Of a stretch of 64,000 bases of DNA, positions 31,252-54,095 are shown piece by piece. Both the position numbers and the translations under genes were made by a program. Location of the stretch: assembly GCF_011386835.1 (NCBI RefSeq), contig NC_088803.1, positions 19,158,001 through 19,222,000 on the forward strand, read 5' to 3'. Every line of letters starts with the position of its first letter. Position 1 is the stretch's first letter. Source of the DNA: Chrysemys picta bellii (Eukaryota). Under the pieces are notes generated by a model. The model was not told the DNA's origin, did not search any database, and saw only the letters and a list, made by a program, of their open reading frames with translations.

Positions 31252-34200
31252 TCAGGACACGATGTCCTGCAGGGCAGAGGGCAGGTCGGGGTACATGAAG
31301 CAGTAGCCACTCTCCAGGGTGCGTTTCGGCGCCACTCGCTGGCCCTCCAGCAGCATGACGGCCCGCTCAGCACCGAAGACATCCCGCACTGCCCAGCTGG
31401 GCAGGGGCAGCAGGGTCGGGCACCCCAGGGCCGAGCCCAGCTCCTGGGCAAAGTCGACGTTGGAGGTGCCAGACGAGGCCGGGGAGACCCCGTTGAGAAC
31501 CCCATGCACACCCTCCGTCTCCAGGGCGTGGCACACGACACCGGCCAAGTCCCGGATGTGGATCCATGGGAAGGGCTGGAGGCCAGAGCCCACGGGGCCC
31601 CCCAGGCCAAGCCGGAACGGCCAGAGCATCTGCGAGATGGCACTTCCACCCTTCCCCAGCACCACACCTGCAGGAAGAGGAAAGTCAGAGAGAGACTCCG
31701 GAGCCAGCCAACCACGCCTCCCTCTCCGAGCTAGCCAGTCTCCCAGTCCAAGCCTGCCTTGGGGCCAGTGCCCCCTCGAGGGGAAAGGGTCCATGCCCCA
31801 TTCCCTGCCCCCCCCAGCCAGCCAGCAGCCCCCCTCCCCCTGAGCCAGCCACAGTCTCCCAGCCCAAGCCAGCCTTGGGGCCAGCATCACCTGGAGGGGA
31901 AAGACCCCGTGCTCCATTGCCCCCCACCTTGAGCCAGCCAGTCCCCACCCTGGGGCCATATGGGAGCCAGCATCCCCTAGAGGGGAAAGGCCCTGTATCC
32001 CATTCCCCACCTCCATGAGCCAGCTAGTCCTTGCCCTGAGGTGAGATGGGAGCTGGTGATCCCTAGAGGGGACAGGCCCCATGCCCCGACGCACCGGATC
32101 TCACCACAGCCTGGCGCGTGCTGTCCCCGGGAATTTTAGCTGCTGCCTCCCAGGCGCTCAACAGGCGTGAGAAGAAGTCGAAGTCACCGCCGGGACTCTC
32201 CTCGGTGTACTCAGCCATGGGGCTTGGGCGGTAATACCCTGCCGGGCAATGGGCAGGGAACTGTAGTGCCAGCCAGTGCGCATAGCCCTACCCCTCATTG
32301 ATATCCCTCCCTCTTCTGTAGCAATTGCATCTGGTGACGGGCAGAAACACTACTATTTTCCCTCCCACTCCAATGTCAGAAGTGCATTGATGTCATAGGA
32401 GGCTGGGCTCCATTCTCTTACAATGCAAATTTTCTTCTCTCTTGGTGGCAGAAGGACAGTTTCACAGGATGTTGTGTTTGGCCAGGGGACTATTTTTCCA
32501 TCTCTTCCCAATGGTGGAAGAACATCAGCATCACCAGAGGTTGTGCTTTGTCCTTGACCTACAAGAGGAGGGACTATTTCCCCCCCCCCTCTGCAGCGGA
32601 AGGATCACAATGTGTCATGGAAGACTGTGCTGCACCCCAGGCCAATTTTCCCTTCTTCCTAGTGCCACAGTGCCACATAGGGCTGCACTTTGTCTTGCAC
32701 TAGAAGGGGGGACTGTATATCCCCTCAGTGGCGGAAGGATACATGTTGTGCAAAGTGTGCTCTACCCAGGGCCTATTTTTCCCTCTCTATGCAATGGTGG
32801 AAGCACACTCTTTCCACAAGGTGCTGTGATCTGTCCTCTCATGATTGGGGGACTATTTTCTCTAAGTGGCGGAAGCACACCAGCGCCAGCGAAGGCTGTG
32901 CAAGGATGATGCACCACAGGGACTATTTTCTCTCCATGGCAGAAGGACACAATGCTGTTATGGGAGGTTGTGCTGCACCTGGGGACTATTTCTCCTGTCC
33001 CCTCAGCAGTAACTTCCAGAGGCCACACTCTGCCTTGTCACTGCCCAGGGACTATTTCCACCTGGTGGAGGGATACCATAGGACAGGATGGCATGAGTTG
33101 CACTCTGGCCATGCACAATAAATACCTACGCCGGTGACGAGGACCCAGGAGCGGGGCAGCCTTTCGGCCTCAGCGATGGCCCTGGCCAAGGTCTTGGTGG
33201 TCTCCACCCGGCTGGCAACCACAACCCTGTGGAAGGCATCATCCCACCTTCAGGGGGAGAGAGCACAAAGGGGTCACACTCAACCACCCCACCCCCATTC
33301 TCCTCTGCCAATCGCAGCCCAACAAGCAGCTATTTATACCATACCATGAATCCCACTAAATCTTCCCCCAGAAGTAATGGCCCAGGAGGAGAAAGGTTCC
33401 TAGCAGAAGTTTCACATCCTGACCAAGTCCCCTCTGATGGTACCTAAAGGAGAGCAACCCATTCCCCTGCACTCCCCCAGGGAGTACAGGGGAGTGACAC
33501 AAATCACCACACCCCAGAGCAATGGGAGGCAGGACTCTCTCCCCCGCACACTCCTCAGATGTAGGTGGGAAAAGGCTCCCTGTCCCAGGGAGAGTGGGGG
33601 GAACTGTGAGTATTTGGGAATGGCAGTGGGGTGTCTGGAAGATGCTGGTTCCACTCTGTGGGAGACAATTGGGTGGGTGTCTAGTGTAGGTGTGACAGGG
33701 CTGCTAGCATCAGTGTCACAAAAGAGGCCAGATATTGGGCAAGACTATTTATACCCCCACTGGTGCACTCTCCTAATGCTTCCCCTTGGAAACAAGAATT
33801 CTGAGAAGAAAGGTTCCTAGTGACAATTATGTTTCAACCCCCAATTCATCCCCAATTTGCAGAACACAACCCTTCCGTCCTGCCCCACCTCCACTGCATT
33901 ATGGGTAGTACAGGAGAACAGGGAGAGACTGAGTCATCCCCATTTCTGTCCTTCACTGAAGGGACGCCACATAGGTTGTTACAGGGATTATTCTCCCCTA
34001 GCATGCCCAAAGCCCCGGACACACCTGCGAAGGGGGTTGAGAACATTCTCACCAGCCAAGTTCACCGCAGCATCACAAGGGGGCAGGCCGGAGCGGGACA
34101 GATCATCCTGGGGAGACAGGAAAGAAATGGTATTCCACACAGCTCAGTCTCCCCACTAACCCCTAAACCCTGCCAGTCCAGTCTCCCCTTATCCCCTGGA

Positions 34201-37481: not shown

Positions 37482-40400
37482 ATGCTGTTGTTCCTGCTCC
37501 CTGCAGCCTTTCTTGTGCGAATCCTGTCCCCCGGGGCTCAGGCTGGTGAGTCTCGCAGGCTGGGGTGGGGGGGGGGGGTGAGCAGATAAGACCCACAGGG
37601 AGCAGAGTGTTCGGGCACCGGCCCAGCCATCTCCCCAGCCTCATCAAAGTGGCGTGGGAGCTGGAGGAGAACTGGGTGGGGTGCTTCTGTCCTCAGGCCC
37701 CATGATTCCAGCTGGGGTCGTCTCCTCCTGCACTGGCCCCAGATGCAGCATGGCCAAGTCCCAGCCTTTGCCCCTGCTGCTCGACCAAGGAGTAACTGCT
37801 AGGCCCATGGTGGACCAGCTGGTGGATAAGTCCCAGCGGGTCACGGGGCGCTTTGCTAGTCCGGAGCAGCAATGGAGTGGCCAAGAAGGCTGGGCTCTCC
37901 CCTGGGCTCTGGGAGGCGGGGGTGGCTTATGCCTTCACGATCATCAGCTGTATATATATGACAGGTGCCCTTCTATGCCAGTCCACAGGGGGGACGAGAG
38001 CTTTTTCTCAAGCTGTAGCAGCTCATGGATTAGCTGGGGAGGTCCCCGGGTCAGCCCCCAGCAGATTGGCCACAAAAGCAGCCACTTGGCAATGGAGAGG
38101 AGGGGGGTTTGCCATGTCACAGACCTGCCTCCATTCGTCTGGGATGATTTTTAAGACCTCGATCAATAATAGCAGAAGGCTTTGGCCCCGGGTCAGTAAC
38201 ACGGGCACTGCTATGGGCAGCAGGAGTGGCTTGGACAAGGTATTTGCAGTTATCTCATGTGAGGGATATTGTTTGTAGAGTCGTCAACTCTCTGGCCAGA
38301 AGGTCCATGTGATCATCTCGTCTGGCCTCCTGCAGGACGCAGGTCAGAGACCTGCCCTCATTAATTCCTGTTAGAAAAACAGCCCAGCTTGATTTACAAA
38401 TCACCAGCGATGGAGAGTCCATCCAGCCATTGTTCCAGTGGTTACTAACTCTAATGGTTAAAAATTTGCATCTCATTTCCAGTCTGAATTTGTTTCAACT
38501 TCCAACCATTGGGTCGGGTTAGACCTTTCCCGGCTGGATTCTCTGCCCATTATTTACTATTTTTTCCCCAGGTAGGTACTTAGAGACTGTGATCGAGTCA
38601 CCCCTGAACCTTCTCTTTGTTAAGAAAAATAGATCAAGCTCCTTGGGTCTATCACTCTAAGGCAGGTTTTCTAACCTTCTAACCATTCTTGTGGCTCTTC
38701 TCTGACCCCTCTCCAATTTACCAACATCCCTCTTGAATTGTGGATACCAGAACTGGACTCAGGATTCCAGCAGCAGTCGCACCAAATCCAGAGGTAAAAT
38801 AACCTCTCTGCTCCTACTGGAGATTCCCTGTTTCTGCATCCCAGGATCACATTAGCACTTTTGGCCGCAGCGTCACACTGGGAGCTCATGGTCAGCTGAC
38901 TATCTGCCCCAATCCCAAGGGTTTTTCTGAGTCACTGCGTCCCAGGATTGGGTCCCCCGTCCCATACATGTGGCCAAAATCCTGTGCTCCTAGATGTTGC
39001 CTTTATCTCTGGCCATAGGAAAATACATGTTGTTTGCCTGAGCCCAGTTTACCAAACACTCCAGATTGCATCACTGACCCATCCTCTTCATTATTTACCA
39101 CTCCCCTCTCTTTTGTGTCATCTGTAAACTTTACCTGCGATGATTTTATTTGTTTCTTCAAAGTCATAGATAAAAACATGTTCATTATCAGAGGGCTAAG
39201 AATGGTTGGACTCAGCCCAGGAGGTGACAAGCCCCAGAGTGTTTCAGATTTCTCTAGAAAGAGGCCCCAAAAGCACTGAGACGCTCCAGTGCGAATGGCC
39301 CAAAGGCGTGTCTCAGAAATGCATGTTGATCTCTCTGGACCAATCCAGTTCTCATCAAGGCATCATGAAAGATTCACACATCCTGGCGTTGGCCCATTTG
39401 TAAAGGTTTAATGGCCCAAAATAAAGGTATAATGGCCCCATTAAACCAAAATCTCTAGGGCAACTTGAAACTTGCTGTCACAGATGGTCAGGGATAGATG
39501 TGGGTGCCAAAATTCCCTACAGATGTGGAGAGGGGGATGGGAAGGGGCTGATTTCCCAGCCTCATATTTTCCCAAGTGGTGGATTTGAACCCATCCTTGT
39601 CTTTCTCCCAGGGGGGATCGTTGGGGGACAGGAAGCTGTGCCCCACTCCAGACCCTACATGGCCTTTCTGAAGATAAAAAGATGCTTCGAACCCATGAAT
39701 ACCTGCGGGGGGTTCTTGATCCGGGACGACGTGGTGGTGACGGCGGCTCACTGTAGAGTGAAGTGGAGGTAAGGATCCCTCCCCCACCCTGCCCACCAGG
39801 GGATCAGCTCAACCTCTGCAGAGCCACGCTTGAGGTCTCAATTCCCAGTGACGATGTTGCTCCAGCCAACCGCTCCAGTGCGATCACAAGGCCATGGATC
39901 AGCTGGATCCAATGCATAGGGGAATACCCCAGCCATGGGGATACCAGGCAGCCTGGCACCCCCTAGAGGGGAAAGGCTCTGTGTCCCATTCCCTGCCCCC
40001 CTCAACCACCCAGTGCCCTCGAGTTCTCCCAGATGTGATGTGTCATGCACTATGGCATTATTCAGAAAAGGGGTTCAGGGCTGGTCATTCCCAAAGTGGT
40101 CAGAGTGTCCAGAAGCCCTAGACCCCCCTGTGACTGCAGGACCGATATGTGGAGATGGGAGGGGCTTTCGAAGGGAGAGCCGTCTCTTGGGGTGTGCTCA
40201 GCACTGACGCCTGGCTGGTCTCTGTGTGTCCGGGCAGCAAAGGCATCGTGGTGCTGGGGGCCCACAACATTCGGAAGAAAGAACCAAGAGAACCATGGAG
40301 TCAGAAAATTAGAGTGAGGCGCTGGATCCGCCACCCGAAATATAACAAAATGACCCAAAACAATGACATCATGCTGCTGCAGGTACAACCCCCATCCCAT

Positions 40401-41285
40401 CACCCTGCCCTGAGTGACCCCACACTGCTGCAGACACTACCCCCATCCCATCACCCTGCCCCCAGTGACCTCACACTGCTGCAAGCACTGCCCCCATCCC
40501 ATCACCCCGCCCCCAGTGACCTCACACTGCTGCAGGCACTGCCCCCATCCCATCACCCCGTTACTCTCCATTGCACTCTGGTCTGCTTACGTCTCCCTTG
40601 CATCCAATTCTCTTGTCCCTCACACGGCAGCTGAGAAAGAGGGCTGAACTCAATGACTGGGTGCAGCCCATCCCTCTGCCCCACCCCTGGCCGGAGGTAC
40701 CTGTGGGCACCAGGTGCAACGTGTCTGGGTGGGGCTGGATGCAAGTTAATCCCCCTAAGAGCTCGGACGTGCTGCAGGATGTGGTTCTGGAGGTGATGGC
40801 TGACGAGGTGTGTGAACACAATTTGACCAAACCATATGATGCTAAATCCATGCTCTGTGCGGGGGATCCCAGAGGCAAGAAAGCCACCCTGAAGGTAAAG
40901 ATCCTGCCGTCCGGGGGGGGTGGAGGGGGAGGCTGCTCTGGTATATTCTTTGGGAGTGGGGAGGGTCGAATTCAGATCTCAAATGCCAAGGGCGTGGAGG
41001 GAAGGTGACATTGGGCTGGGGATGGGGGTGGGAGGACTGTGAGTATGACAGCGACAAGTGAATCACACAAGGCGTTACTCCTCTGAGGCATGTTTCATTT
41101 CACAGGGTGATTCAGGGGGCCCCCTGGTGTGCGATGGGGTGCTCCAGGGCATCGTCTCATGGGGGCCGAGCAATGGGGCCTCTCCTGAAGTGTATGCAAG
41201 AGTCTCCCAGTTCATCCGCTGGATACGGACAGTGATGAAACAGCTGATGCCCCCGGATGCTCCTGGAATCTCGTCTCGAACCTGA
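37482..41285 (+). CDS. Protease copy C: intact cathepsin G/granzyme/mast-cell-protease-like S1 serine protease; exons 37482-37545, 39612-39768, 40238-40382, 40631-40894, 41106-41285
   Basis: Five GT-AG exons with phases 1,2,0,0; signal peptide, GG propeptide, IVGG N-terminus, [14 protein letters not shown] (His57), NDIML (Asp102), GDSGG (Ser195); lacks Cys191 as expected for the chymase-locus family. Confidence 0.92.
40383..40560 (+). repeat. 51-bp intron-3 minisatellite (exon-end/donor copies) in copy C
   Basis: Three full units in frame with exon 3 ([17 protein letters not shown] etc.); internal donor copies have degenerated to AC, or GC (after CAA and CAG). Confidence 0.85.
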
Positions 41286-45679: not shown

Positions 45680-47430
45680 TAGGAGGCACTGTGCTGCAGG
45701 GGCCAGATGGGGACCTTGATAGGGGGTGCTGTGCTGCAGGGGACAGAGGGGGGGCTCAGTAGAGGGTGCTGGAATGAAGGGGGCAGAGGGAGGGCTCAGT
45801 AGGGGACGCTGGGCTGCGGAGGGTAGGGGGGCTCAGTAGGGCGCACTGTATTGCAGGGGGCAGATGGGGGCCTCGGTAGGGGGACACCATGCTGCAGGGG
45901 GCAGAGGGGTTTCAGTAGGGGGCAGCATGCACAGGGGCAGAGGGGGGCTCAGTAGGTGGCACTGTGCTGCAAGGGGCAGAGGGGAGCTCAGTAGGGGGCG
46001 CTCTCCCCCAAGCGGGAGGAAAGGCTGGATCTGCAAGATGTTCTGCCCACCCACCCCAGGGCATCCAGCCGCAAAGGCAGGAAGAGAACCCAGGCGTCCT
46101 GAGCCCCAGTGCCCCCACTCCGAGTCCACCTGCTCCTGCTGACGCCTGCGGTGCAGAGCCGGCCGTGCGCAGTACCCAGGCAAACCAAGGCAACAAAATG
46201 GCTCCAGTAAAAAACTCTGTGAAGGTTACACGTGTACTGACGGTTGGTGGCTCGAAAACATCACCATTTCACCCATGCGCATGACTGCGGTGCCACCCAG
46301 GTGGGGCTGGGGACTGGCAATTGGGGGGCCAGGCGCTATGGGGCACAGGGGTGATTGGAGGTGGTGGGGAGAGCACAGGACGGAGGCACGGCAGGGATAC
46401 ACCCTTGTCCCCCCCCCCCCCCATAACCTCAGGGAGTTTTGGCTAAATCCACGAAACGCCCCCCCTCCCCTCCCCGAGGGCCTCCTCTTCGCCCAGGCTG
46501 GCCCATGTGGTGCTAGCCCAGGACAGCGACGGTCACGCGGTGACACCTGGGCAGGACAGAGACGTGGCCAAGGTGTCTCCTGGCTTAGCCAGGGCAGAGT
46601 CGAGGGTTCCTGGCTGTGCCCGCGCCGGGCAGAACGGCCCCTCCGAGCGGCCTGCAGGGGAAGCCAAGCAGAGATTGACTCAGGCGGAGACCCTGCTTCC
46701 ATCCCCTGCAGTGGGAATGGTGAGGGGCAATGGGGATTATCACACCTTGGCGGGGAGGTGGCTTCCCACAGCCCCTGCCCCGCCACCCAGCCAGGCCACA
46801 GCACAGAGCCCGGGTAGCTCACGCGAGGCAGGGCCAAGAGGGGCAGTCCGTGGCTGGGAGAGCAGCAAGGGGAAACCCCGGGTGCTGCGCAGGGGGAATT
46901 GTACTGGGGGGACATGTTCCCCTGGCAGTCAGTGCTGACCCCAATGCCCCAGGGCGGCGCTAGGGGCACTGTGCTGCAGGGGGGTGCTGGGGGCACTAGG
47001 GAGTGGTGTGCTGGAGGGGGCTCTGGGGGCACTAGGGGGTGTTATGCTGCAGGGGGGTGCTGGGGGCACTGGGGGCACTAGAGGGTGCTGTGCTGCAGGG
47101 GCACAGGGGGTGCTGTGCTGCAGGGGGGTGCTGGGAGCACTAGGGGGTGCTGTGCTGCAGGGGGTACTGGAGGCATTGGGGACGCTGTGCTGTAGGGATG
47201 ATGGGGGCACTAGGGGGTGCTTGGGGCACTAGGGGGTGCTGTGCTGCAGGGGGTGCTGGGGGCACTAGGGGGCGCTGTGCTGCAGGGGCACTGGGGTGCT
47301 GTGCTGCAGGGGGGTGCTGTGGGCACTAGGGGGTGCTGTGCTACAGGGGGTGCTGGGGGGCACTAGGGGGCACTATGCTGCAGGGACACTGGGGGCGCTG
47401 AGCTGCAGGGGGGCTGGGGGACACTAGGGG
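45680..47430. repeat. G-rich degenerate tandem repeats (GGGGGTGCTGTGCTGCAG-type) at 45680-46000 and 46950-47430
   Basis: Many short imperfect units visible directly. Confidence 0.75.
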
Positions 47431-49984
47431 GCATCACTCACCTGGCCTCCCCCTCAGATACCAGCCCAGGGCGGCGACTCCCAGAGCAGCCAGCAGGCAG
47501 CTGGCGAGGACGCCCAGGGACCCGGCCTGGCCTGTGGCCTGGGGATCTGCAAATGAGCAGAGACAGACTGAGCCATGGGTCCCGCCTGCCCCTGCACCTA
47601 TTCCCCCCCTACACCCCTTGGCCCTGGGCCAGCAGATCCACACCCGGTCTGCTCCTCCCAGCCCCAGCCCCCCATGAGTCTGCCCTGCAGCTAAATTCCC
47701 TCTTCCCCTACCCCTCTGAGCCCTCCAGAACCTCCCACTTTCCCTCCCTCTTTGGATCCCCCACAACCTCTCACCTTCCCTTCCCCCCTCTTAGCCCCCA
47801 GAACCCCCACCTTCCTCTTCCCCTCAGAGCCCCCCAGAACCTCCTCGCTGCCTATCCATGCCTCCCAAAACTGCCCCTCTGCCTTTCTGCCCCCAGCTCC
47901 CCTGCCCCTCCCTTCCATAGAGGGTGCTCCATTCCCAGCCCCCCCCCCCGCACTCACCCCAGGTGATCCTCAGGGGGGCGCCCCCCAGGCTGACGTGTCT
48001 CACCACACACACATGCTCCCCCAGCCCCAGCTCAATGGACACTTGGATCTGGAAGGTGGGGTCCCCGTTGGGCCGGATCCTGCTGGTCATCTGTTCCCCT
48101 AGGGCCCCCCTGCCCTCCCGCTCCCAGGTCACCTCAATGTCACGGGGGTAGAACCCCGTCACGTGGCACATGAGGCGGCGAGGCTGGCCCCGGGTTCCTC
48201 GCACGAGGGACACGTGCACTGTGGGCTGGGCTGAGGGGACAGAAAGGGTTAAAGATCACGGGGGCCGCGTGTTGGGAGTGAGGGGCACATGCAGAGCTGC
48301 GGGAAGCCCAGGGCTGGGCTAGCACGGGGCTGCGTTTTGGGAGTGAGGGGTACCGGCAGAGCTGGGGGGAGCCCAGGGCTGGGCTAGCACGGGGCTGTGG
48401 GTCGCGAGTGAGGGGCACTGGCAGAGCTGGGGATGGGGGGGCAGGACTGGGCTAGCAGGGGGCTGTGGATCAGGAGTGAGGGGCACTGGCAGAGCTGGGG
48501 ATGGGGGGCAGGACTGGGCTGGCAGGAGGCTGTGGTTTGGGAGTGAGGGGCACCAGCAGAGCTGGGGGGAGCCCAGGGTTGGGCTAGCAGGGGGCTGTGG
48601 ATTGGGTGTGAGGGGCACCAGCAGAGCTGGAGGGAGCCCAGGGCTGGGCTAGCAAGGGACTGCGGGTCAGGAGTGAGGGGCACCGGCAGAGCTGGGGGGA
48701 GCCCAGGGCTGGGCTAGCAAGGGGCTGCAGGTCGGGAGTGAGGGGCACCGACAGAGCTGGGGATGGGGGGCAGGACTGGGCTAGCAGGGGGCTGTGGGTT
48801 GGCAGTGAGGGGCACAGGCAGAGCTGCCACCTGTCGTCTGCGCGGTGAATGGCGAGGTGATCCGGATGAAGGTCCTGCACTGCTGTGGGGTATGGGCGTT
48901 GATCCCGGCCAGCATCTCCCTCTCACGGTTCCAGCGCTCGGCCATGCGCCAGGCCGCCGGGTGCACCGAGAACCAGCGGTTCTGGTCCCCGTGGTACTGC
49001 AGCACGTCCTCCCCATTCAGGGCGTACCTGGTAACGGCTTGAACGGCGCCGCTGGCTTCGTCCAGCTCACAGCTCTGCACGACCTGCATGTAGTAGGGCT
49101 CTGGGGGCGGAGCGGCCACATGAGTGACTCAGCAGGGAGCTGCCGCCAGGGGGCAGAGTGGGGACGAAGTTCTCCCAGGGATGGAACCCAGGAGTCCTGG
49201 CTCCCAGCCCGCCCCCACTCTAACCACTAGCTCTCACTCCATTCCCAGAGCTGGGGAGAGAACCCAGGAGTCCTGGCTCCCAGCCCCCACCCCCCACTCT
49301 AACCATGAGACCCCACTTCCCTTCCAGAGCTGGGGATAGAGCTCCCAGCTCCCCCGCACCCCACTTTAACCACTAGGTACCATGGAAATCACTCCCCTCT
49401 GGTGTCCTGCCCCTAGCTCCCTCCCACTGCCCGTGCCCCCCTTTCCTGGGCTGAGTTAACGGAGTGCCAGGGCCCGAGGACTCACCGGCCTTTGGGGAGC
49501 TGGCGTTCACCGCCCGAACCAGGGCCTGGTACTCGGTCTCTACCCAGGGGTCCCAGAACATGCACCGGGCGCTGCTGACGCTCCAGAACTGGTGGGTCTC
49601 CCGGTTGCCCTGCATGTAGCCGTTGCGTGGCATCATCCTCCGGCTGCTGCTGTCGTAGGCCGAGAGCGCCAGGCCGTTCACCTGCAGCAAGCTCTGGCGC
49701 TTGGGCAGCCCAGGGGCTGCCTGCGGCGAAATAATCTGGGAGTGGGTGAAACGGTGAACCCCTACAGGAAGGAGAGAGAGACCAGGATGGGGATGGGACC
49801 CAGGCATCCGGGCAGCCACCCGAGGGGCCCCTGCAGCACCCACTCCTGGGGGAGAGTGATTGGGATGGGGATGGGACCCAGGCATCTGGGGGGCGAACAG
49901 GGGTCACTTACCAGCTGAGACGACCGAGCAGAGAAACAAGAGCCAGGCGGAGACCAGAGCGGGATGGGCCCCCCCAGGAGCCAT
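46680..49984 (-). CDS. Nonclassical MHC class I-like heavy chain: leader 49912-49984, alpha1 49486-49761, alpha2 48831-49100, alpha3 47958-48230, TM 47442-47546; tentative cytoplasmic exon 46680-46705 (GDGSRVSA*)
   Basis: All introns phase 1 and GT-AG; exon sizes 73/276/270/273/105 bp; alpha1 H..PGLP..VNG..YDS..PR..FW..NAS; alpha2 disulfide CEL...QQC with ALNGED and RW; Ig-C1 alpha3 LMCHVTGFYPRDI...PNGDPTFQ...CVVRHVSL; hydrophobic TM followed by RGR. The last exon is uncertain. Confidence 0.9.
48280..48830. repeat. ~61-bp GC-rich minisatellite in the MHC-like intron; same family at 56540-56940 and 34670-34850
   Basis: Units GCAGAGCTGGGGGGAGCCCAGGGCTGGGCTAGCAGGGGGCTGTGGGTCAGGAGTGAGGGGCAC, about nine copies. 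Confidence 0.85.
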
Positions 49985-51779
49985 CAGGGAACAGGGGATG
50001 GGACGGCACTCTGTGGGGTGAGGGGTGGGGCTGGGACCCCCAGGGCTGGAGAGACCAGGGCCGCCCTCTGCCTGCACCGAGCTCTCTGACGCTCTGACAG
50101 GAAACACCTGCGAGGAAACCCAGGCCCACAAACCGATGCGGATCCACCCGTCCAGCCCCTCCCTGCCAGTGAGGGGGCGGGGGGTGGGGTGGGGCTGGCA
50201 TCAGACGTTGCTGGGCAGACGGGTTGGGGATGTGTCGTAACAGCATCCGCCTGGTGCCTGGGCTTAGCTCTGCGTGTGGAGGAATGAACCGCAGTGGCAG
50301 ATTGTGCCTGTCAGCTTCCCGGCAGAGGGGAAGCCAGCGGTGGGGAGATGGTTGGGGGGGGATTTCCTTAGTGCAGACGGCTCAGGGACACGGCACGCAC
50401 CAGGCCTGGGCCAGAGGTGGTCAGAAAGTACAAGAGGGCAAACACCTCCATCAGGAATCTGAGCCCTTTATGGATTCCCAGTTCCTCAGTAGTAAAGGCC
50501 AGATGGTAGCGTGTTAAACCCCAGGTGATAGTGCATTTAAAGCTCCAGATGTTAGTGAATTAAAGCCCCAGAGATTATTGCATGAAACCCCAGATGTCAG
50601 TGCATTAACTGGCAGATGTCAATGCATTAACTGGCAGATGTTAGCACTCCGGGCCACAATCCTGAGGATGGTAGAAGAGCTTTAACAGAATAGAATCAAA
50701 TTCTGCACAAAGGACCCATCAACTCACTAGTTTGAGAGCTGCAGAGTGGAAGCCTTTTGTAGCACCCAATAAAAGGTTTAATGAGTCCTACAACCCCCCC
50801 AGACAATGCTCCGTTTGCGTGGGCGCCAGGTCTGCTAACCGGCTATTCCCACAGACGGTCTGGGCATTGGCTCCACTGGAAAGTTGGAACTTTGGGAAGA
50901 AGCAGAGATTGCTCCTTCGGCTCATGCAGGGGAGGAGATTCAGAGCCCCAGCTCCGAAGGGCAGATCTTTGCTTATTGCTCGGTCCTCCTGCTTGGCTTT
51001 TGTGTTGGATGTGGGGCCAGTTGGGAATCCACCTTCCATCCCGTGAAAACTTCTGTGATTTTGGAATTCCCCTAAAAATCCTTCCAAAATTGTTGTGAGA
51101 AAGAGCCAGACATGCACCATCCCAGCCAGGGCACTCCCGTGGGAGGCAAGAAACGGCAATTCAAATCGCTGCTCTGCCTGATCTAGGACAGCAGGTCTGC
51201 ACTGTCCCGGCTGGGCCCGGGCTAGCGTGTGGTGGGGCTCTGGCAATCTCTCCTGTTGGAGCTTTTCCACATTGTATAGCTCTGTGACATTCCCATCTGG
51301 TGTTATCCGGACCAGTGATCTGCTAGGTCACTCCAGTCCTTGACTCTGGGAGCCAGCCTTACCCTGCTCTGCTGTGAGAACCTCCACTCCTGGGCTGTTC
51401 ATGCACAGCCTCTGGCATGTAAGTTGCTCCTTGAATTGTGCAACTGAATGACACTAGCCAATATCTGTACTTCCAGACACAACCTTAGGAACCTCCATCT
51501 TGCAGTGTCCAGTTATGCCCCCTGGACACTGCAAGCTTATATGAGTTTGTCAATTTAACAAAGAAATTGATATGTACCAGGCTTGTTATCCCAAGGGGAG
51601 TCTCTGACATGCTTTAAACCAAACGCACTGCTTCAGGTAGAATAAGCAAACAGATTTATTAACTATAAAGATTGATTTTAAGTGATTATAAGTCAAAGCA
51701 TAACAAGTTGGACTTGGTCAAATGAAATAAAAGCAAAACACATTCTAAACTGATCTTAACACTTTCAATGCCCTTACAT

Positions 51780-51901: not shown

Positions 51902-54095
51902 ACTACTGCCCTCCAGGAGGTCAGTTACACAGTTCCTTCTCAAAACCTGGGTCACAGGCTTAGTGCCTGGGTGCACAGATGCTGACCCAGCCATCCTCCT
52001 AGTGTCCTGGGCATCCTGCCCCAAATGATTAGTGAGGAGACATTCCTGTACCCCCACTATTCCTTCCCCAGTTTCCTCCTCTGAGCCCCCTCCTAAGACA
52101 CATTTCTTTGTGCTCCCTAGGAAGGGTTCGGTCTCTCATTCATCTGCAGAACTCTGCCAGCTAACAACTGGGACAGTTTCCTTAATCACTGACAACACCT
52201 CTCCTGCCCCTGCGCCTGAGGGCATGTTGCTAGTCTCAGCCCCTCCCATACTTGGAAGCACCGTGCTTCCCTGTGTTACAGTCACAGGAATCCACCCACC
52301 TCAGTGGTTTCTGAGATCCCCTGCCCCTTCTCTGGGCTTTCCTCTGGGACACTTTGCTCTATGCTTCCTAAAGCCAGTTTTAGTGCTGGTTCAGCTGTGA
52401 CCTGCTGGCAGCTAACAACCTGGACAAGTCTCTCTCTGGCAGGCATTACACCCCGATCCCTTCCTGATGTGGTGTTGCCTCCAGCTGCAGTGCAGGAGTT
52501 GGTCTCAACCACCCTCTCTCCTGGAAGCATGTGGCTTCCCCCCGCTGCAGAAGAATCAAGGAGACTCTCCCATTCTCTCAGCAGTTCCCAGTATGCTGGG
52601 ACCCCCTTTCCTTCGGGGGTCCCAGCATAACACTCCCTCCTGCTGCAGGCAAATACTTTAACCTGAGCTACACAGAAAAAATCATTACCAGGAAGCAGGT
52701 CGACTAGGAGGTGTTCCATTACCCCCACAGTCAAAACACTTTCCAAACCTCCCCAAATCACATGGATTTTAGCTAGTGGTATGAGGAATCTGTTTCCACC
52801 CACCCCACAATCTCTGCCATTTGGCCAGGCAGCATACTGGCCTTTGGGACCACACTCTGCTTAACCAGAGAGATCTGGGCCCCTGTATCCCTCTGCCCCA
52901 AGTATTCCCTGCCATCAATTTGGACAGCCTGAACATGCTCCATATCTGGTTCTGCAGAGGCTAACCTCACAGAGCCAATATGATAGCTTTCAATTGCTTG
53001 GGGGGTTTCTGTGTTGAGGACAGCAGAACTAATGTGAACTATTGTTTGCCTGCTTCCTCCCAGCACAGGGCATTTATTGCTCAGGTGATCAGTGCAATTA
53101 CACCAATAGCACCTTTTGGGCTCTTCTGCTTTTACAGAAGAGATACCGGTAGAGGAATGTTTTTGGGTAAGAGAATGTTTAGGCTCCCAGCCCCCTTCTC
53201 TCTTCCTAGGGGCAAAATGGGATACTCCCTTCCCACCAGTTTTAAACCCCTCTTTCTGTGGCCTGCCCTCAATAGACGCCTGATTCTGTTCGAAGGCATC
53301 AGCTAAAAAAGCCATCTCATCCACAGACTTTACATCTTTGTTCCATAGACACTGCTTTACATCAGCCTTACATACGCTTAGGAGATGCTCTTGAGCAACA
53401 AGATCCAACATTCCCTCAAAACTTGCCACCTCTTTACCCCTCACCCATTTTCCCAACAAATCTTTCAGTGTGTTTACATATTCCCCATTACTCATACCAA
53501 TATCCCTCTTAAGATTCCTAAATTTAACTCTGTATGTTTCAGGGGTAATCTGAAAACTTCACAAAGAAGTATCTTTAACTTTACAATAGTCTAGCATCTT
53601 CAATAGGCATTCCATTGAATACATTTCAAGCTTTACCAGTTAATTTTGCAAGCAGGGTGGGAACTCTCTTATCATCAGGGATTTGATGTATTACACACAG
53701 ACTTTCAAAGGTAGTCAGATACTCAACAACATCATCCTCTTCACTGTATGCAGGACATAAGTGTTCCCACTTGTGGATTTTTGGAGTGGTGGGAGTCGTT
53801 GGGGTTGGGGGGTTCTGGTTTCTGCTTCTCTAGCAGGTCCAGCTGGTGTTTTCACTCTCTTTCTCTTTCTTCCCACTCTCTCTCTTTTTCTTCCATAGCC
53901 CTTCGGTGTGCAGCCTCTTCTTCTTTGAGCCTCATTTCTGCCTGCCCCATTTGAAACTCACTGTCCTTTGTCTTCTCTTCTGCTTCCAGTCTGGCCAGCT
54001 CTAGTTTTGTAGCTGCCTCACTGGTAGTCATTTTTCTGTTTTCTTGTGCTTATTTCCCTCACACAAAATTAAAAAAAAAAAAAAAAAAAAAAAAC

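What the first reader, a model, noticed from the sequence alone, without database searches (positions are those of the whole stretch)
46680..49984. Non-MHC-linked class I-like gene in the protease/RNase locus with an FcRn-like alpha2 domain
The gene looks intact, but most peptide-anchoring residues are replaced (approximately Y59F, Y84A, T143M, Y159H, Y171T). Beta2m-contact positions (Q96, G120, D122, P235, Q242) and the N86 glycan site are kept. The alpha2 pattern PY..Q....CEL......V....YALNGED.....Q..W....P.A.....RW matches my recollection of mammalian FcRn ([31 protein letters not shown]...QGTWGGDWPEALAISQRW) better than HLA, MR1, HFE or CD1, including an acidic pair at FcRn E115/E116. Against orthology, the D130/W131/E133 equivalents, the post-Cys Pro and the endocytic tail motifs are not evident. 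FcRn is generally regarded as mammal-specific, so this may be a reptilian relative of that lineage or an uncharacterised lineage with a non-peptide ligand.
Basis: partly seen in the sequence, partly recalled or inferred. Interest (0 to 1): 0.82.

Follow-up and report, generated by a model that had tools for sequence, protein, structure and literature searches.

The report
Reptile nonclassical MHC class I-like gene
This is an intact, transcribed turtle gene from an old, poorly described branch of the MHC class I-like family that sits among protease and RNase genes; it cannot hold peptides the classical way and is not the reptile version of the antibody transporter FcRn.

Summary
The gene is real: six phase-1 GT-AG exons on the minus strand encode a 371-aa type I membrane protein (signal, alpha1, alpha2, alpha3, TM, tail). 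It is colinear with, and 96% identical to, a RefSeq model in Terrapene. RNA-type contigs in 4 of 4 runs join the TM exon to a tail exon at 46651-46533, not 46705-46680. The residue observations hold: only W147 of the eight peptide-end anchors survives, and the beta2m-contact positions and N86 are kept. It is not MHC-linked (own contig C13; the MHC is on C12).

It belongs to a discrete lineage: 14 clusters, then a gap of eight orders of magnitude in E-value. The lineage is found in turtles (two orthogroups), alligators and geckos, with frog genes as nearest relatives. Databases misname it "class II beta-like".

The locus matches human 14q11.2-q12 (RNase A, METTL17, SDR39U1, chymase/granzyme proteases), not FCGRT at 19q13. 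FcRn is only a marginal alpha2 match (30 bits, against 42.5 for ULBP3). It is absent from the alpha1 hits and from the top 60 alpha1+alpha2 hits.

Alpha1/alpha2 are under purifying selection (dN/dS 0.06-0.35). One caveat: the minisatellite-filled alpha2-alpha3 intron appears retained in contigs of three runs.

The scan had noted only this same stretch before.

The parts
49912..49984 (-). Exon 1, coding part: start codon and signal peptide (73 nt, ends in phase 1). The 5' UTR continues beyond 50050.
   Evidence: The joint 49912->49761 appears in 4 of 4 runs, and contigs reach the end of the laid stretch at 50050.
49486..49761 (-). Exon 2, alpha1 domain (276 nt). It carries F59, the lone C67, W60/W70/W73 and the N86-A-S glycosylation site.
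   Evidence: The splice to exon 3 (49486->49100) is seen in 2 of 4 runs.
48831..49100 (-). Exon 3, alpha2 domain (270 nt). It carries the C101-C164-type disulfide pair, the YALNGED motif and the conserved RWFSVHPAAW..ERWN helix.
47958..48230 (-). Exon 4, alpha3 Ig C1-set domain (273 nt). P235 and Q242 are kept. The E-F loop is 5 residues shorter than in paralogues.
   Evidence: The splice to exon 5 (47958->47546) is seen in 2 of 4 runs.
47442..47546 (-). Exon 5, connecting peptide and transmembrane segment (105 nt).
46533..46651 (-). Exon 6, cytoplasmic tail (39 codons) and TGA stop at 46535-46533. The 3' UTR runs at least to 46485.
   Evidence: candidate; joint in 4 of 4 runs; colinear with the 371-aa Terrapene model P0049.
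48260..48826 (.). 65-bp minisatellite (8.6 copies) that fills the alpha2-alpha3 intron. The donor CAG|GTGGCA is weak, and contigs of three runs read from both flanking exons into this intron.
46963..47431 (.). 37-bp-unit minisatellite (about 11 copies) that fills most of the TM-tail intron.
40149..40634 (+). Exon of a neighbouring chymase/granzyme-type serine protease gene, convergent with the class I-like gene. The same arrangement is seen in Terrapene and Emydura.
31252..32094 (-). Exon with a DUF1731 domain (SDR39U1-type), the classical border gene of the chymase locus.
   Evidence: PMC8537139.
63162..63668 (+). RNase A family gene upstream of the class I-like gene, at the edge of a cluster of 45 or more RNase A matches.

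Best explanation
Identity (about 0.9).
The gene is the turtle 'orthogroup A' member of an old nonclassical MHC class I-like lineage that lies outside the MHC. The lineage occurs in turtles, crocodilians and geckos, with frog genes as its nearest relatives. In turtles this copy is fixed inside the RNase A / chymase-granzyme locus, the counterpart of human 14q11.2-q12.

Shown:
- It encodes a 371-aa type I membrane glycoprotein with a normal class I fold.
- It is transcribed.
- Its alpha1/alpha2 platform is under stronger purifying selection than alpha3 or the tail.
- It has lost seven of the eight residues that clamp peptide ends.

Inferred function:
- It pairs with beta2-microglobulin, because the contact residues are kept.
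- It reaches the cell surface and acts as a non-polymorphic ligand whose conserved platform is read by a germline-encoded or semi-invariant lymphocyte receptor (about 0.45). The conserved platform comprises W60, C67, W70, W73, L81 and the alpha2 stretch RWFSVHPAAW..ERWN.
- It may hold a small non-peptide ligand in a Trp-lined pocket that contains the lone Cys67 (about 0.2).
- It is not an FcRn orthologue, and an FcRn-like Ig or albumin transport role is unlikely (about 0.06).
For: Gene model and splicing:
-. The model is 96% identical to and colinear with RefSeq orthologue P0049.

Discrete lineage:
- An exhaustive HMMER search with alpha2 gives 14 clusters at E<=1.5e-16, then a gap to 2.9e-8.
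- Members come from at least 15 turtle species, Alligator mississippiensis and A. sinensis, and two geckos.

Tree:
- Frogs, then gecko, then alligators, then turtles. Turtles split into group A (100/99, holding the window gene with Terrapene, Natator, Emydura and Pelodiscus) and group B (98/99).

Own genome:
- At least seven paralogue loci, several of them carrying stops, lie on the same contig at 9.6-11.2 Mb.

Synteny:
- and PMC8537139.

Fold:
- AF2 model with pLDDT 85.8. Best matches are ZAG Z 20.8, HFE 19.9, shark UGA 19.7, H-2Kd 19.1 and FcRn 18.6.

Selection:
- dN/dS against Terrapene, Emydura and Pelodiscus: alpha1 0.06/0.18/0.35; alpha2 0.16/0.21/0.33; alpha3 0.34/0.40/0.38. The tail is about 0.9-1.3 against Emydura and Pelodiscus.

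Anchors and contacts:
-. Conserved positions.
Against: - No functional data exist for any member.
- Beta2m pairing, surface expression and any ligand or receptor are inferred only.
- Contigs of three of four RNA-type runs read from the alpha2 and alpha3 exons into the intervening minisatellite intron. The dominant assembled form there would therefore stop 22 codons after alpha2. A properly spliced alpha2-alpha3 junction was not among the listed joints.
- Three of the four runs are only guessed to be RNA.
- No tree could be built with FcRn, HFE, UT, CD1 or MR1 sequences, so deep affinities rest on HMM scores and fold comparison.
- Dijkstra et al. 2018 (Immunogenetics 70:459) was not held and could not be read. 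It may already name this lineage.
Confidence: 0.8

Rival explanations
1. It is a reptilian orthologue or close relative of FcRn (FCGRT). It would bind IgY and/or albumin in a pH-dependent way and recycle or transport them.
For: - In the alpha2-only profile FcRn (30.3 bits) slightly outranks classical class I, MR1, HFE and CD1.
- The window's YALNGED shares ALNGED with dog FcRn, as printed in the supplement of PMC4509613.
- A Pro at HLA position 138 (HPAA, against WPEA in FcRn) is shared by eye.
- The most conserved stretch of the family overlaps the region that forms the Fc site in FcRn.
Against: - Synteny is with 14q11.2-q12, not 19q13.33.
- FcRn is absent from the alpha1 hits and from the top 60 alpha1+alpha2 hits.
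- ULBP3, RAET1L and even class II beta score higher on alpha2.
- Fold searches show no preference for FcRn.
- The D130/W131/E133 equivalents are V/H/A.
- There is no Trp or di-Leu endocytic motif, and the tail evolves neutrally.
Confidence: 0.06
2. It is the sauropsid/amphibian representative of the UT lineage, which is known from marsupials and monotremes.
For: Visual comparison with opossum and platypus UT sequences printed in the supplement of PMC4509613 shows:
- a shared N-terminal VHH start;
- (F/Y)AL(D/N)GED in alpha2;
- x-P-(E/A)-A at HLA position 138;
- an alpha3 motif TF.(I/L)QV.(I/L)EL with a long loop, then CVV.H, and no W244.

A 2018 paper that I could not read argues that UT predates tetrapods (cited).
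Against: - No marsupial or monotreme protein was among the 28 named hits of the 31 at E<=1e-3 in the exhaustive alpha2 search.
- By-eye identity to UT is only about 15-25% in alpha1/alpha2.
- The opossum UT cluster is flanked by human chr2/chr20 synteny, unlike this locus.
Confidence: 0.15
3. The copy is losing function. Because the expanded minisatellite intron with a weak donor is retained, it mainly yields a truncated alpha1-alpha2 product or a transcript targeted for decay.
For: - Contigs in X1, X2 and X4 run from spliced neighbouring exons into both ends of the alpha2-alpha3 intron.
- The donor is GTGGCA, against GTAAGA in alligator and GTAAAG in gecko.
- The intron is a 65-bp x 8.6 minisatellite.
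Against: - The ORF is intact, and alpha3 is under purifying selection (dN/dS 0.34-0.40).
- The same donor and gene length occur in the Terrapene orthologue, which RefSeq models as spliced.
- One X8 contig starts exactly at the exon border 48831 with 21 unmatched letters before it, which is compatible with splicing.
- Contigs drop rare forms.
Confidence: 0.1
4. It is an MR1-like presenter of small microbial metabolites.
For: - MR1 is the top PDB match of the alpha1+alpha2 family profile (47.9 bits, 1.2e-11).
- The predicted groove positions are rich in aromatic residues.
Against: - The lead over HFE (45.6 bits) and bird class I (44.6 bits) is trivial.
- The Schiff-base lysine K43 aligns to Met/Leu.
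- Identity to MR1 is 20-25%.
Confidence: 0.05

Closest known systems
FcRn (FCGRT)
   Same: - Class I fold with alpha3 and a TM segment.
- Lies outside the MHC and has lost the peptide anchors.
- Shares the ALNGE(D/E) motif and a Pro at HLA position 138 in alpha2.
- Marginally better alpha2 HMM score than classical class I.
   Different: - Different chromosomal neighbourhood.
- No alpha1 similarity.
- The key Fc-contact residues D130/W131 are not kept.
- No endocytic tail motifs.
- Not the best sequence or fold match.
UT family of marsupials and monotremes
   Same: - A divergent class I lineage outside the MHC, with alpha1-alpha3 and a TM segment and unknown function.
- Several short motifs are shared by eye (VHH start, ALxGED, xPxA, the alpha3 QV..EL...CVV.H motif without W244).
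   Different: - Low overall identity.
- Different synteny.
- No UT hit in the exhaustive search.
- The relationship was not computed.
MR1 and HFE
   Same: - Top PDB profile hits (47.9 and 45.6 bits).
- Top Swiss-Prot fold hits.
- Non-polymorphic class I-like molecules that pair with beta2m.
   Different: - MR1's K43 is absent.
- Identity is 20-25% only.
- The gene is not at the MR1 or HFE genomic positions.
ULBP/RAET1 NKG2D ligands
   Same: - Best single-domain match for alpha2 (ULBP3 at 32-42 bits).
- The intron-retaining transcript would encode an alpha1-alpha2-only product.
   Different: - ULBP/RAET1 have no alpha3 domain and do not bind beta2m.
- Here alpha3 is present, conserved and keeps the beta2m/CD8-side residues.
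Classical MHC class I of sauropsids
   Same: - Same exon-per-domain, phase-1 gene structure.
- The alpha1 beta-sheet part is most like duck and chicken class I.
- Disulfides, N86 and beta2m contacts are kept.
   Different: - Not in the MHC.
- Seven of the eight peptide-end anchors are replaced.
- The strongest purifying selection falls on alpha1/alpha2, not on alpha3.

Membership tests
MHC class I superfamily (fold and gene plan) | Signal, alpha1, alpha2, alpha3 and TM each in its own phase-1 exon; alpha2 and alpha3 disulfides; alpha1-alpha2 platform plus a C1-set domain. | tested here: met
   - (AF2 pLDDT 85.8 with class I secondary structure).
- (Z 18-21 to ZAG, HFE, H-2, FcRn and CD1).
Reptile/amphibian nonclassical lineage (unnamed here) | Groups with turtle, alligator and gecko proteins that carry GLPK, PRNGY, FW..C..W..W.E, VNxS, YYMQV..CELD, LNGED and HPAAW..AE.WN. 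| tested here: met
   - (E 2.5e-34 to 1.5e-16, then a gap).
- (motifs).
- (starred clades).
FcRn (FCGRT) | Orthologous genomic position, next to RCN3/NOSIP/RPS11 (human 19q13.33). | tested here: not met
   - Neighbours are RNase A, chymase-type proteases and SDR39U1.
- In Pelodiscus the neighbour is METTL17.
-.
FcRn (FCGRT) | FcRn is the closest known family by sequence or structure over alpha1-alpha2. | tested here: not met
   - not in the top 60.
- absent from the alpha1 hits.
- fourth family on alpha2 alone.
- no structural preference.
FcRn (FCGRT) | Fc-contact residues E115, E116, D130 and W131 (human numbering; from established structures, recalled). | tested here: not met
   From the sequence, aligned by the shared NGE and W133 landmarks: E-D is kept, but D130->V, W131->H and E133->A.
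FcRn (FCGRT) | pH-dependent binding of Ig and albumin. | not testable with these tools
   Needs recombinant protein.
Classical MHC class I | Eight conserved peptide-end anchors (Y7, Y59, Y84/R84, T143, K146, W147, Y159, Y171). | tested here: not met
   The residues here are H, F, A, M, R, W, H, T, so only W147 is identical.
Classical MHC class I | Location in the MHC, and high polymorphism. | tested here: not met
   - The gene is on C13, whereas the MHC class I genes are on C12.
- Few differences appear in contigs of four runs. The polymorphism part is only indicative.
MR1 | Lys43 for Schiff-base capture of ligand. | tested here: not met
   K43 aligns to Met (window) or Leu (family consensus) in the HMM alignment.
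UT (marsupial/monotreme) | Groups with UT sequences in a phylogeny. | not tested
   - UT sequences were only available as text in a supplement.
- Motif resemblance by eye only.
- No UT hit.
CD1/PROCR | Closest by sequence, and a deep hydrophobic groove. | tested here: inconclusive
   - No CD1 or EPCR among the top 60 alpha1+alpha2 hits.
- Chicken CD1-1 Z 18.2 and EPCR Z 14.3.
- Groove chemistry was not measurable because no coordinates were returned.
ULBP/RAET1 | An alpha1-alpha2 platform only, without alpha3 and without beta2m. | tested here: not met
   The alpha3 exon is present and under purifying selection.

The most novel reading that the evidence does not exclude
The frog-to-reptile lineage found here is the non-mammalian sister stock of mammalian FcRn, possibly together with UT and HFE-type molecules that share the x-P-x-A alpha2 motif. 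If so, the ancestor of FcRn predates amniotes and was later moved and re-tooled for Ig and albumin binding in mammals.

A second untested reading is that the family-wide lone Cys67, set among Trp60/70/73 at groove-lining positions, captures a small ligand covalently, as Lys43 does in MR1.
Probability: 0.08. Interest if true: 0.8.

Novelty: new member of a known kind. Interest (0 to 1): 0.42.

Why it matters
Reptile nonclassical class I molecules are almost unstudied, and no function is known for any of them.

This lineage stands out for several reasons:
- It is old. It is shared by turtles, crocodilians and geckos, and has frog relatives.
- It is kept at one locus across crown turtles.
- It is constrained most strongly in the ligand/receptor platform.
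- It is systematically misnamed in public annotation as class II beta, ULBP, CD1 or HFE.

Defining it gives comparative immunologists a concrete candidate restricting or ligand molecule for innate-like lymphocytes in reptiles. It also corrects the idea that this gene is a reptilian FcRn. The question of how reptiles move IgY into yolk therefore still points to other receptors.

Tried and rejected
Rejected by the splice joints and by homology of the tail.
- **First word-index search, alligator P0009, alpha1-alpha2 region.** It found only itself. The gecko query found one further gecko. Neither is informative about absence elsewhere.
- **CAP-Gly synteny.** A CAP-Gly gene flanks the alligator copy, but no CAP-Gly hit lies on own contig C13. 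No shared synteny was shown between the alligator and turtle copies.
- **Xenopus copy.** It lies between an hSH3 gene and an SLC1A-type gene, which is also different.
- **Rsm22/METTL17 Pfam search of the own genome.** It found nothing, probably because the match is exon-wise. It is not evidence of absence.
- **Poly(A) signal.** No canonical signal lies within 680 nt of the stop, so the 3' end is undefined.
- **Bacterial promoter/terminator scan.** Irrelevant and empty.
- **Groove-facing versus top-facing conservation.** No clear difference.
- **Phylogeny or profile comparison with FcRn, HFE, UT, CD1 and MR1.** Not done. Those sequences were visible only as text in tool outputs, and long letters may not be typed into calls.
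- **Complex prediction with beta2m.** Not run, because no beta2m sequence could be given by reference.
- **Dijkstra et al. 2018.** Not held.


Full report
**What is there**

Translating the minus strand of 46400-50100 shows class I-like reading frames. Exact borders give five GT-AG exons, all in phase 1:
- signal peptide, 49984-49912;
- alpha1, 49761-49486 (276 nt);
- alpha2, 49100-48831 (270 nt);
- alpha3, 48230-47958 (273 nt);
- connecting peptide and TM, 47546-47442.

Among the candidate terminal exons, the one starting at 46651 encodes a tail homologous to the tails of relatives. With it, the product is 371 aa and ends at a TGA at 46535-46533. This model is colinear, without gaps, with a 371-aa RefSeq model of Terrapene carolina triunguis and is 96% identical to it (P0049). 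The genome is therefore a cryptodiran turtle close to emydids, which agrees with an earlier scan note that guessed 'turtle'.

**Transcription and splicing**

Thirteen small runs hold about 0.21-0.33 of the sampled words of the 3.65-kb stretch, which is about the exonic share. I laid four of them on the stretch. One is recorded as RNA; the other three are only guessed to be RNA.

| Junction | Runs showing the joint |
|---|---|
| exon 1 -> alpha1 (49912 -> 49761) | 4 of 4 |
| alpha1 -> alpha2 (49486 -> 49100) | 2 of 4 |
| alpha3 -> TM (47958 -> 47546) | 2 of 4 |
| TM -> tail exon (47442 -> 46651) | 4 of 4 |

All joints have GT..AG ends on the minus strand.

The alpha2-alpha3 junction was not among the listed joints.
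- In X1, X2 and X4, contigs that are spliced to their other neighbours run on into both ends of that intron.
- In X8, one contig begins exactly at 48831 with 21 unmatched letters in front, which is compatible with splicing but does not prove it.
- The intron is a 65-bp minisatellite of 8.6 copies.
- Its donor is weak: GTGGCA, as in Terrapene. Turtle paralogues have GTGACA, alligator GTAAGA and gecko GTAAAG.
- A retained intron would stop the frame 22 codons after alpha2.

The mature protein starts G1-V2-H3. Its numbering coincides with HLA numbering at F59-W60 and at A84/N86, and alpha2 is offset by +2. I checked the positions against a classical-type class I gene of the same genome (C12) and against the MR1 alignment.

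- The peptide-end anchors Y7, Y59, Y84, T143, K146, W147, Y159 and Y171 read H, F, A, M, R, W, H and T.
- Q96, G120, D122, P235, Q242, the N86-A-S sequon and both disulfide pairs are kept.

These observations are correct.

**Not MHC-linked**

The window is C13:19.158-19.222 Mb. Pfam MHC_I matches in the same assembly lie on C12 (0.8-2.1 Mb), on many unplaced contigs and at a few other places, with none on C13 among the 141 listed.

**Family**

Pfam barely sees the groove domains. Alpha1 has no hit. Alpha2 matches MHC_I at 7e-6 (below the cut-off) and MHC_II_beta at 1.4e-5.

An exhaustive HMMER search of 1.84 billion cluster representatives with alpha2 found 14 clusters at E 2.5e-34 to 1.5e-16. 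Nothing follows until 2.9e-8. Source records show the following:
- many turtles: Terrapene, Chrysemys, Malaclemys, Mauremys, Chelonoidis, Gopherus, Platysternon, Chelydra, Chelonia, Natator, Eretmochelys, Lepidochelys, Dermochelys, Pelodiscus, Carettochelys, Emydura;
- both Alligator species;
- two geckos.

Their database names are 'class II histocompatibility antigen beta chain-like', 'UL16-binding protein 6-like', 'CD1b-2-like' or 'hemochromatosis protein homolog'.

The weak hits beyond the gap are two frog proteins, ULBPs, a horse class I-like protein, teleost class I and a manta ray protein. None of the named ones is FcRn, a bird protein or a marsupial protein.

A maximum-likelihood tree follows the species tree: frogs, then gecko, then alligators, then turtles. 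Turtles split into two groups:
- group A (100/99), which holds the window gene together with Terrapene, Natator, Emydura and Pelodiscus;
- group B (98/99).

The A/B duplication therefore predates crown turtles. The frog genes share the family hallmarks: the lone Cys in the alpha1 helix, NG(Y/F), CELD, YALNG, SHPA..WN. Outgroup sampling was thin and the frog branches are long.

In the own genome, at least seven further paralogue loci, several of them carrying stop codons, lie on the same contig at 9.6-11.2 Mb.

**Locus**

The window holds the following:
- a Trypsin-family exon at 12.5 kb;
- an SDR39U1-type DUF1731 exon at 31.3-32.1 kb;
- another Trypsin exon at 40.1-40.6 kb, convergent with the class I-like gene;
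- the class I-like gene itself;
- an RNase A gene at 63.2-63.7 kb.

The orthologues are placed in the same way:
- The Emydura orthologue is flanked by two RNase A genes and a Trypsin gene.
- The Terrapene orthologue is flanked by a Trypsin gene.
- The Pelodiscus orthologue is flanked by a METTL17-type (Rsm22) gene.
- Two public gene models even fuse the gene with a protease.

SDR39U1 is the classical border gene of the chymase locus, which exists in turtles, alligators and frogs and is reported lost in birds (PMC8537139). C13 carries 45 or more RNase A matches at 18.0-19.23 Mb. The region is thus the counterpart of human 14q11.2-q12, not of FCGRT at 19q13.33. The alligator and Xenopus copies have other neighbours.

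**Comparison with known families**

| Query (call) | Bit scores |
|---|---|
| Single alpha2 sequence (9) | ULBP3 32, HLA-DQ beta 29, ULBP6/RAET1L 29, HFE 25, FcRn 23 (60 residues only) |
| Alpha2 family profile (72) | ULBP3 42.5, ULBP6/RAET1L 35, DQ beta 33.3, FcRn 30.3, duck class I 28.7, H-2Kb 28, MR1 26.9 |
| Alpha1 profile (97) | duck and chicken class I 24-30, MR1 and HFE 22; FcRn absent from all 65 hits |
| Alpha1+alpha2 profile (44) | MR1 47.9, HFE 45.6, bird class I 44, ULBP3 39; FcRn not in the top 60 |

An AlphaFold model of the Terrapene orthologue's ectodomain (pLDDT 85.8) has the class I fold.
- By the structural aligner its matches are ZAG Z 20.8, HFE 19.9, shark UGA 19.7, H-2Kd 19.1, a marsupial class I 18.7, FcRn 18.6 and chicken CD1-1 18.2.
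- In Swiss-Prot models HFE, ZAG and MR1 lead, and FcRn is not in the first 30.

It does not extend to alpha1, to the fold or to synteny. MR1's Lys43 aligns to Met.

UT sequences could be compared only by eye. Several short motifs are shared, but identity is low, UT did not appear in the exhaustive search, and the opossum UT cluster has different synteny. That relationship stays open.

**Constraint**

Nei-Gojobori dN/dS by domain:

| Domain | vs Terrapene | vs Emydura | vs Pelodiscus |
|---|---|---|---|
| alpha1 | 0.06 | 0.18 | 0.35 |
| alpha2 | 0.16 | 0.21 | 0.33 |
| alpha3 | 0.34 | 0.40 | 0.38 |
| CP/TM/tail | not defined (dS 0) | 1.29 | 0.92 |

The platform is therefore the most constrained part in the two closest comparisons. 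This is the opposite of a classical molecule and fits a fixed ligand or receptor. The tail carries no conserved sorting signal in this orthogroup: the YRP(A/P) of group B and alligator is FCPA here.

Family-wide conserved positions are W60, C67, W70, W73, E75, L81 and V82 in the alpha1 helix, and RWFSVHPAAW..ERWN at the start of the alpha2 helix. The second half of the alpha2 helix varies.

**Reading**

- Shown: gene structure, transcription, family membership, locus, loss of the peptide anchors and purifying selection.
- Inferred: beta2m pairing, surface display, and a role as a monomorphic ligand, perhaps holding a small non-peptide ligand, for a lymphocyte receptor.
- Not supported: FcRn orthology.
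- Unresolved: any deep tie to UT, FcRn or HFE; the share of correctly spliced mRNA; and whether a 2018 paper that I could not read already names the lineage.

Noticed in passing
window 48260-48826, 46963-47431, 47711-47844: Three introns of the gene are largely made of G-rich minisatellites: 65 bp x 8.6, 37 bp x about 11, and 36 bp x 3.6. The paralogues at C13:9.85 Mb have an alpha2-alpha3 intron of only about 100 bp.
   Followed up: partly
window 49184-49340: A SINE-like repeat in the alpha1-alpha2 intron (two 79-bp units) has contig depth above 15,000 in all four runs. It is therefore an abundantly represented repeat family.
   Followed up: no
own genome C13:18.04-19.23 Mb and 6.48-6.54 Mb: There are at least 45 RNase A family matches on this contig, most with open frames. 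This very large RNase A expansion ends at the window.
   Followed up: no
own genome C13:9.59-11.23 Mb (L002-L019): At least seven paralogue loci of the same class I-like family lie here. Those at 9.85 and 9.866 Mb have open exons. Those at 9.84, 10.63 and 11.23 Mb carry stop codons.
   Followed up: partly
P0001, P0077 (public proteins): Public gene models fuse this class I-like gene with a trypsin-family domain ('putative oxidoreductase' in Platysternon). These are chimeras of neighbouring genes. The whole family is misnamed as class II beta-like, ULBP6-like, CD1b-like or HFE homologue.
   Followed up: partly
window 49486-49761 (mature residues 60-73): A lone cysteine at mature position 67 of the alpha1 helix is kept in about 90% of family members, including the frogs. 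It is flanked by near-invariant W60, W70 and W73 at positions that line the groove in HLA.
   Followed up: partly
window 47958-48230: The alpha3 E-F loop is 5 residues shorter (ELGLGEH) than in group B, alligator, Emydura and Pelodiscus. The deletion is shared with Terrapene and with sea-turtle orthologues.
   Followed up: no
window 52773-53495 (-): A 240-aa ORF has a weak SCAN-domain match (E 1.6e-5, below the Pfam cut-off). It is possibly derived from a transposon.
   Followed up: no
own genome C12:1066500-1071500 (L026): An MHC-linked class I gene has all the Tyr anchors but Met in place of W147 (EITKGKM), which is unusual for a classical molecule.
   Followed up: no
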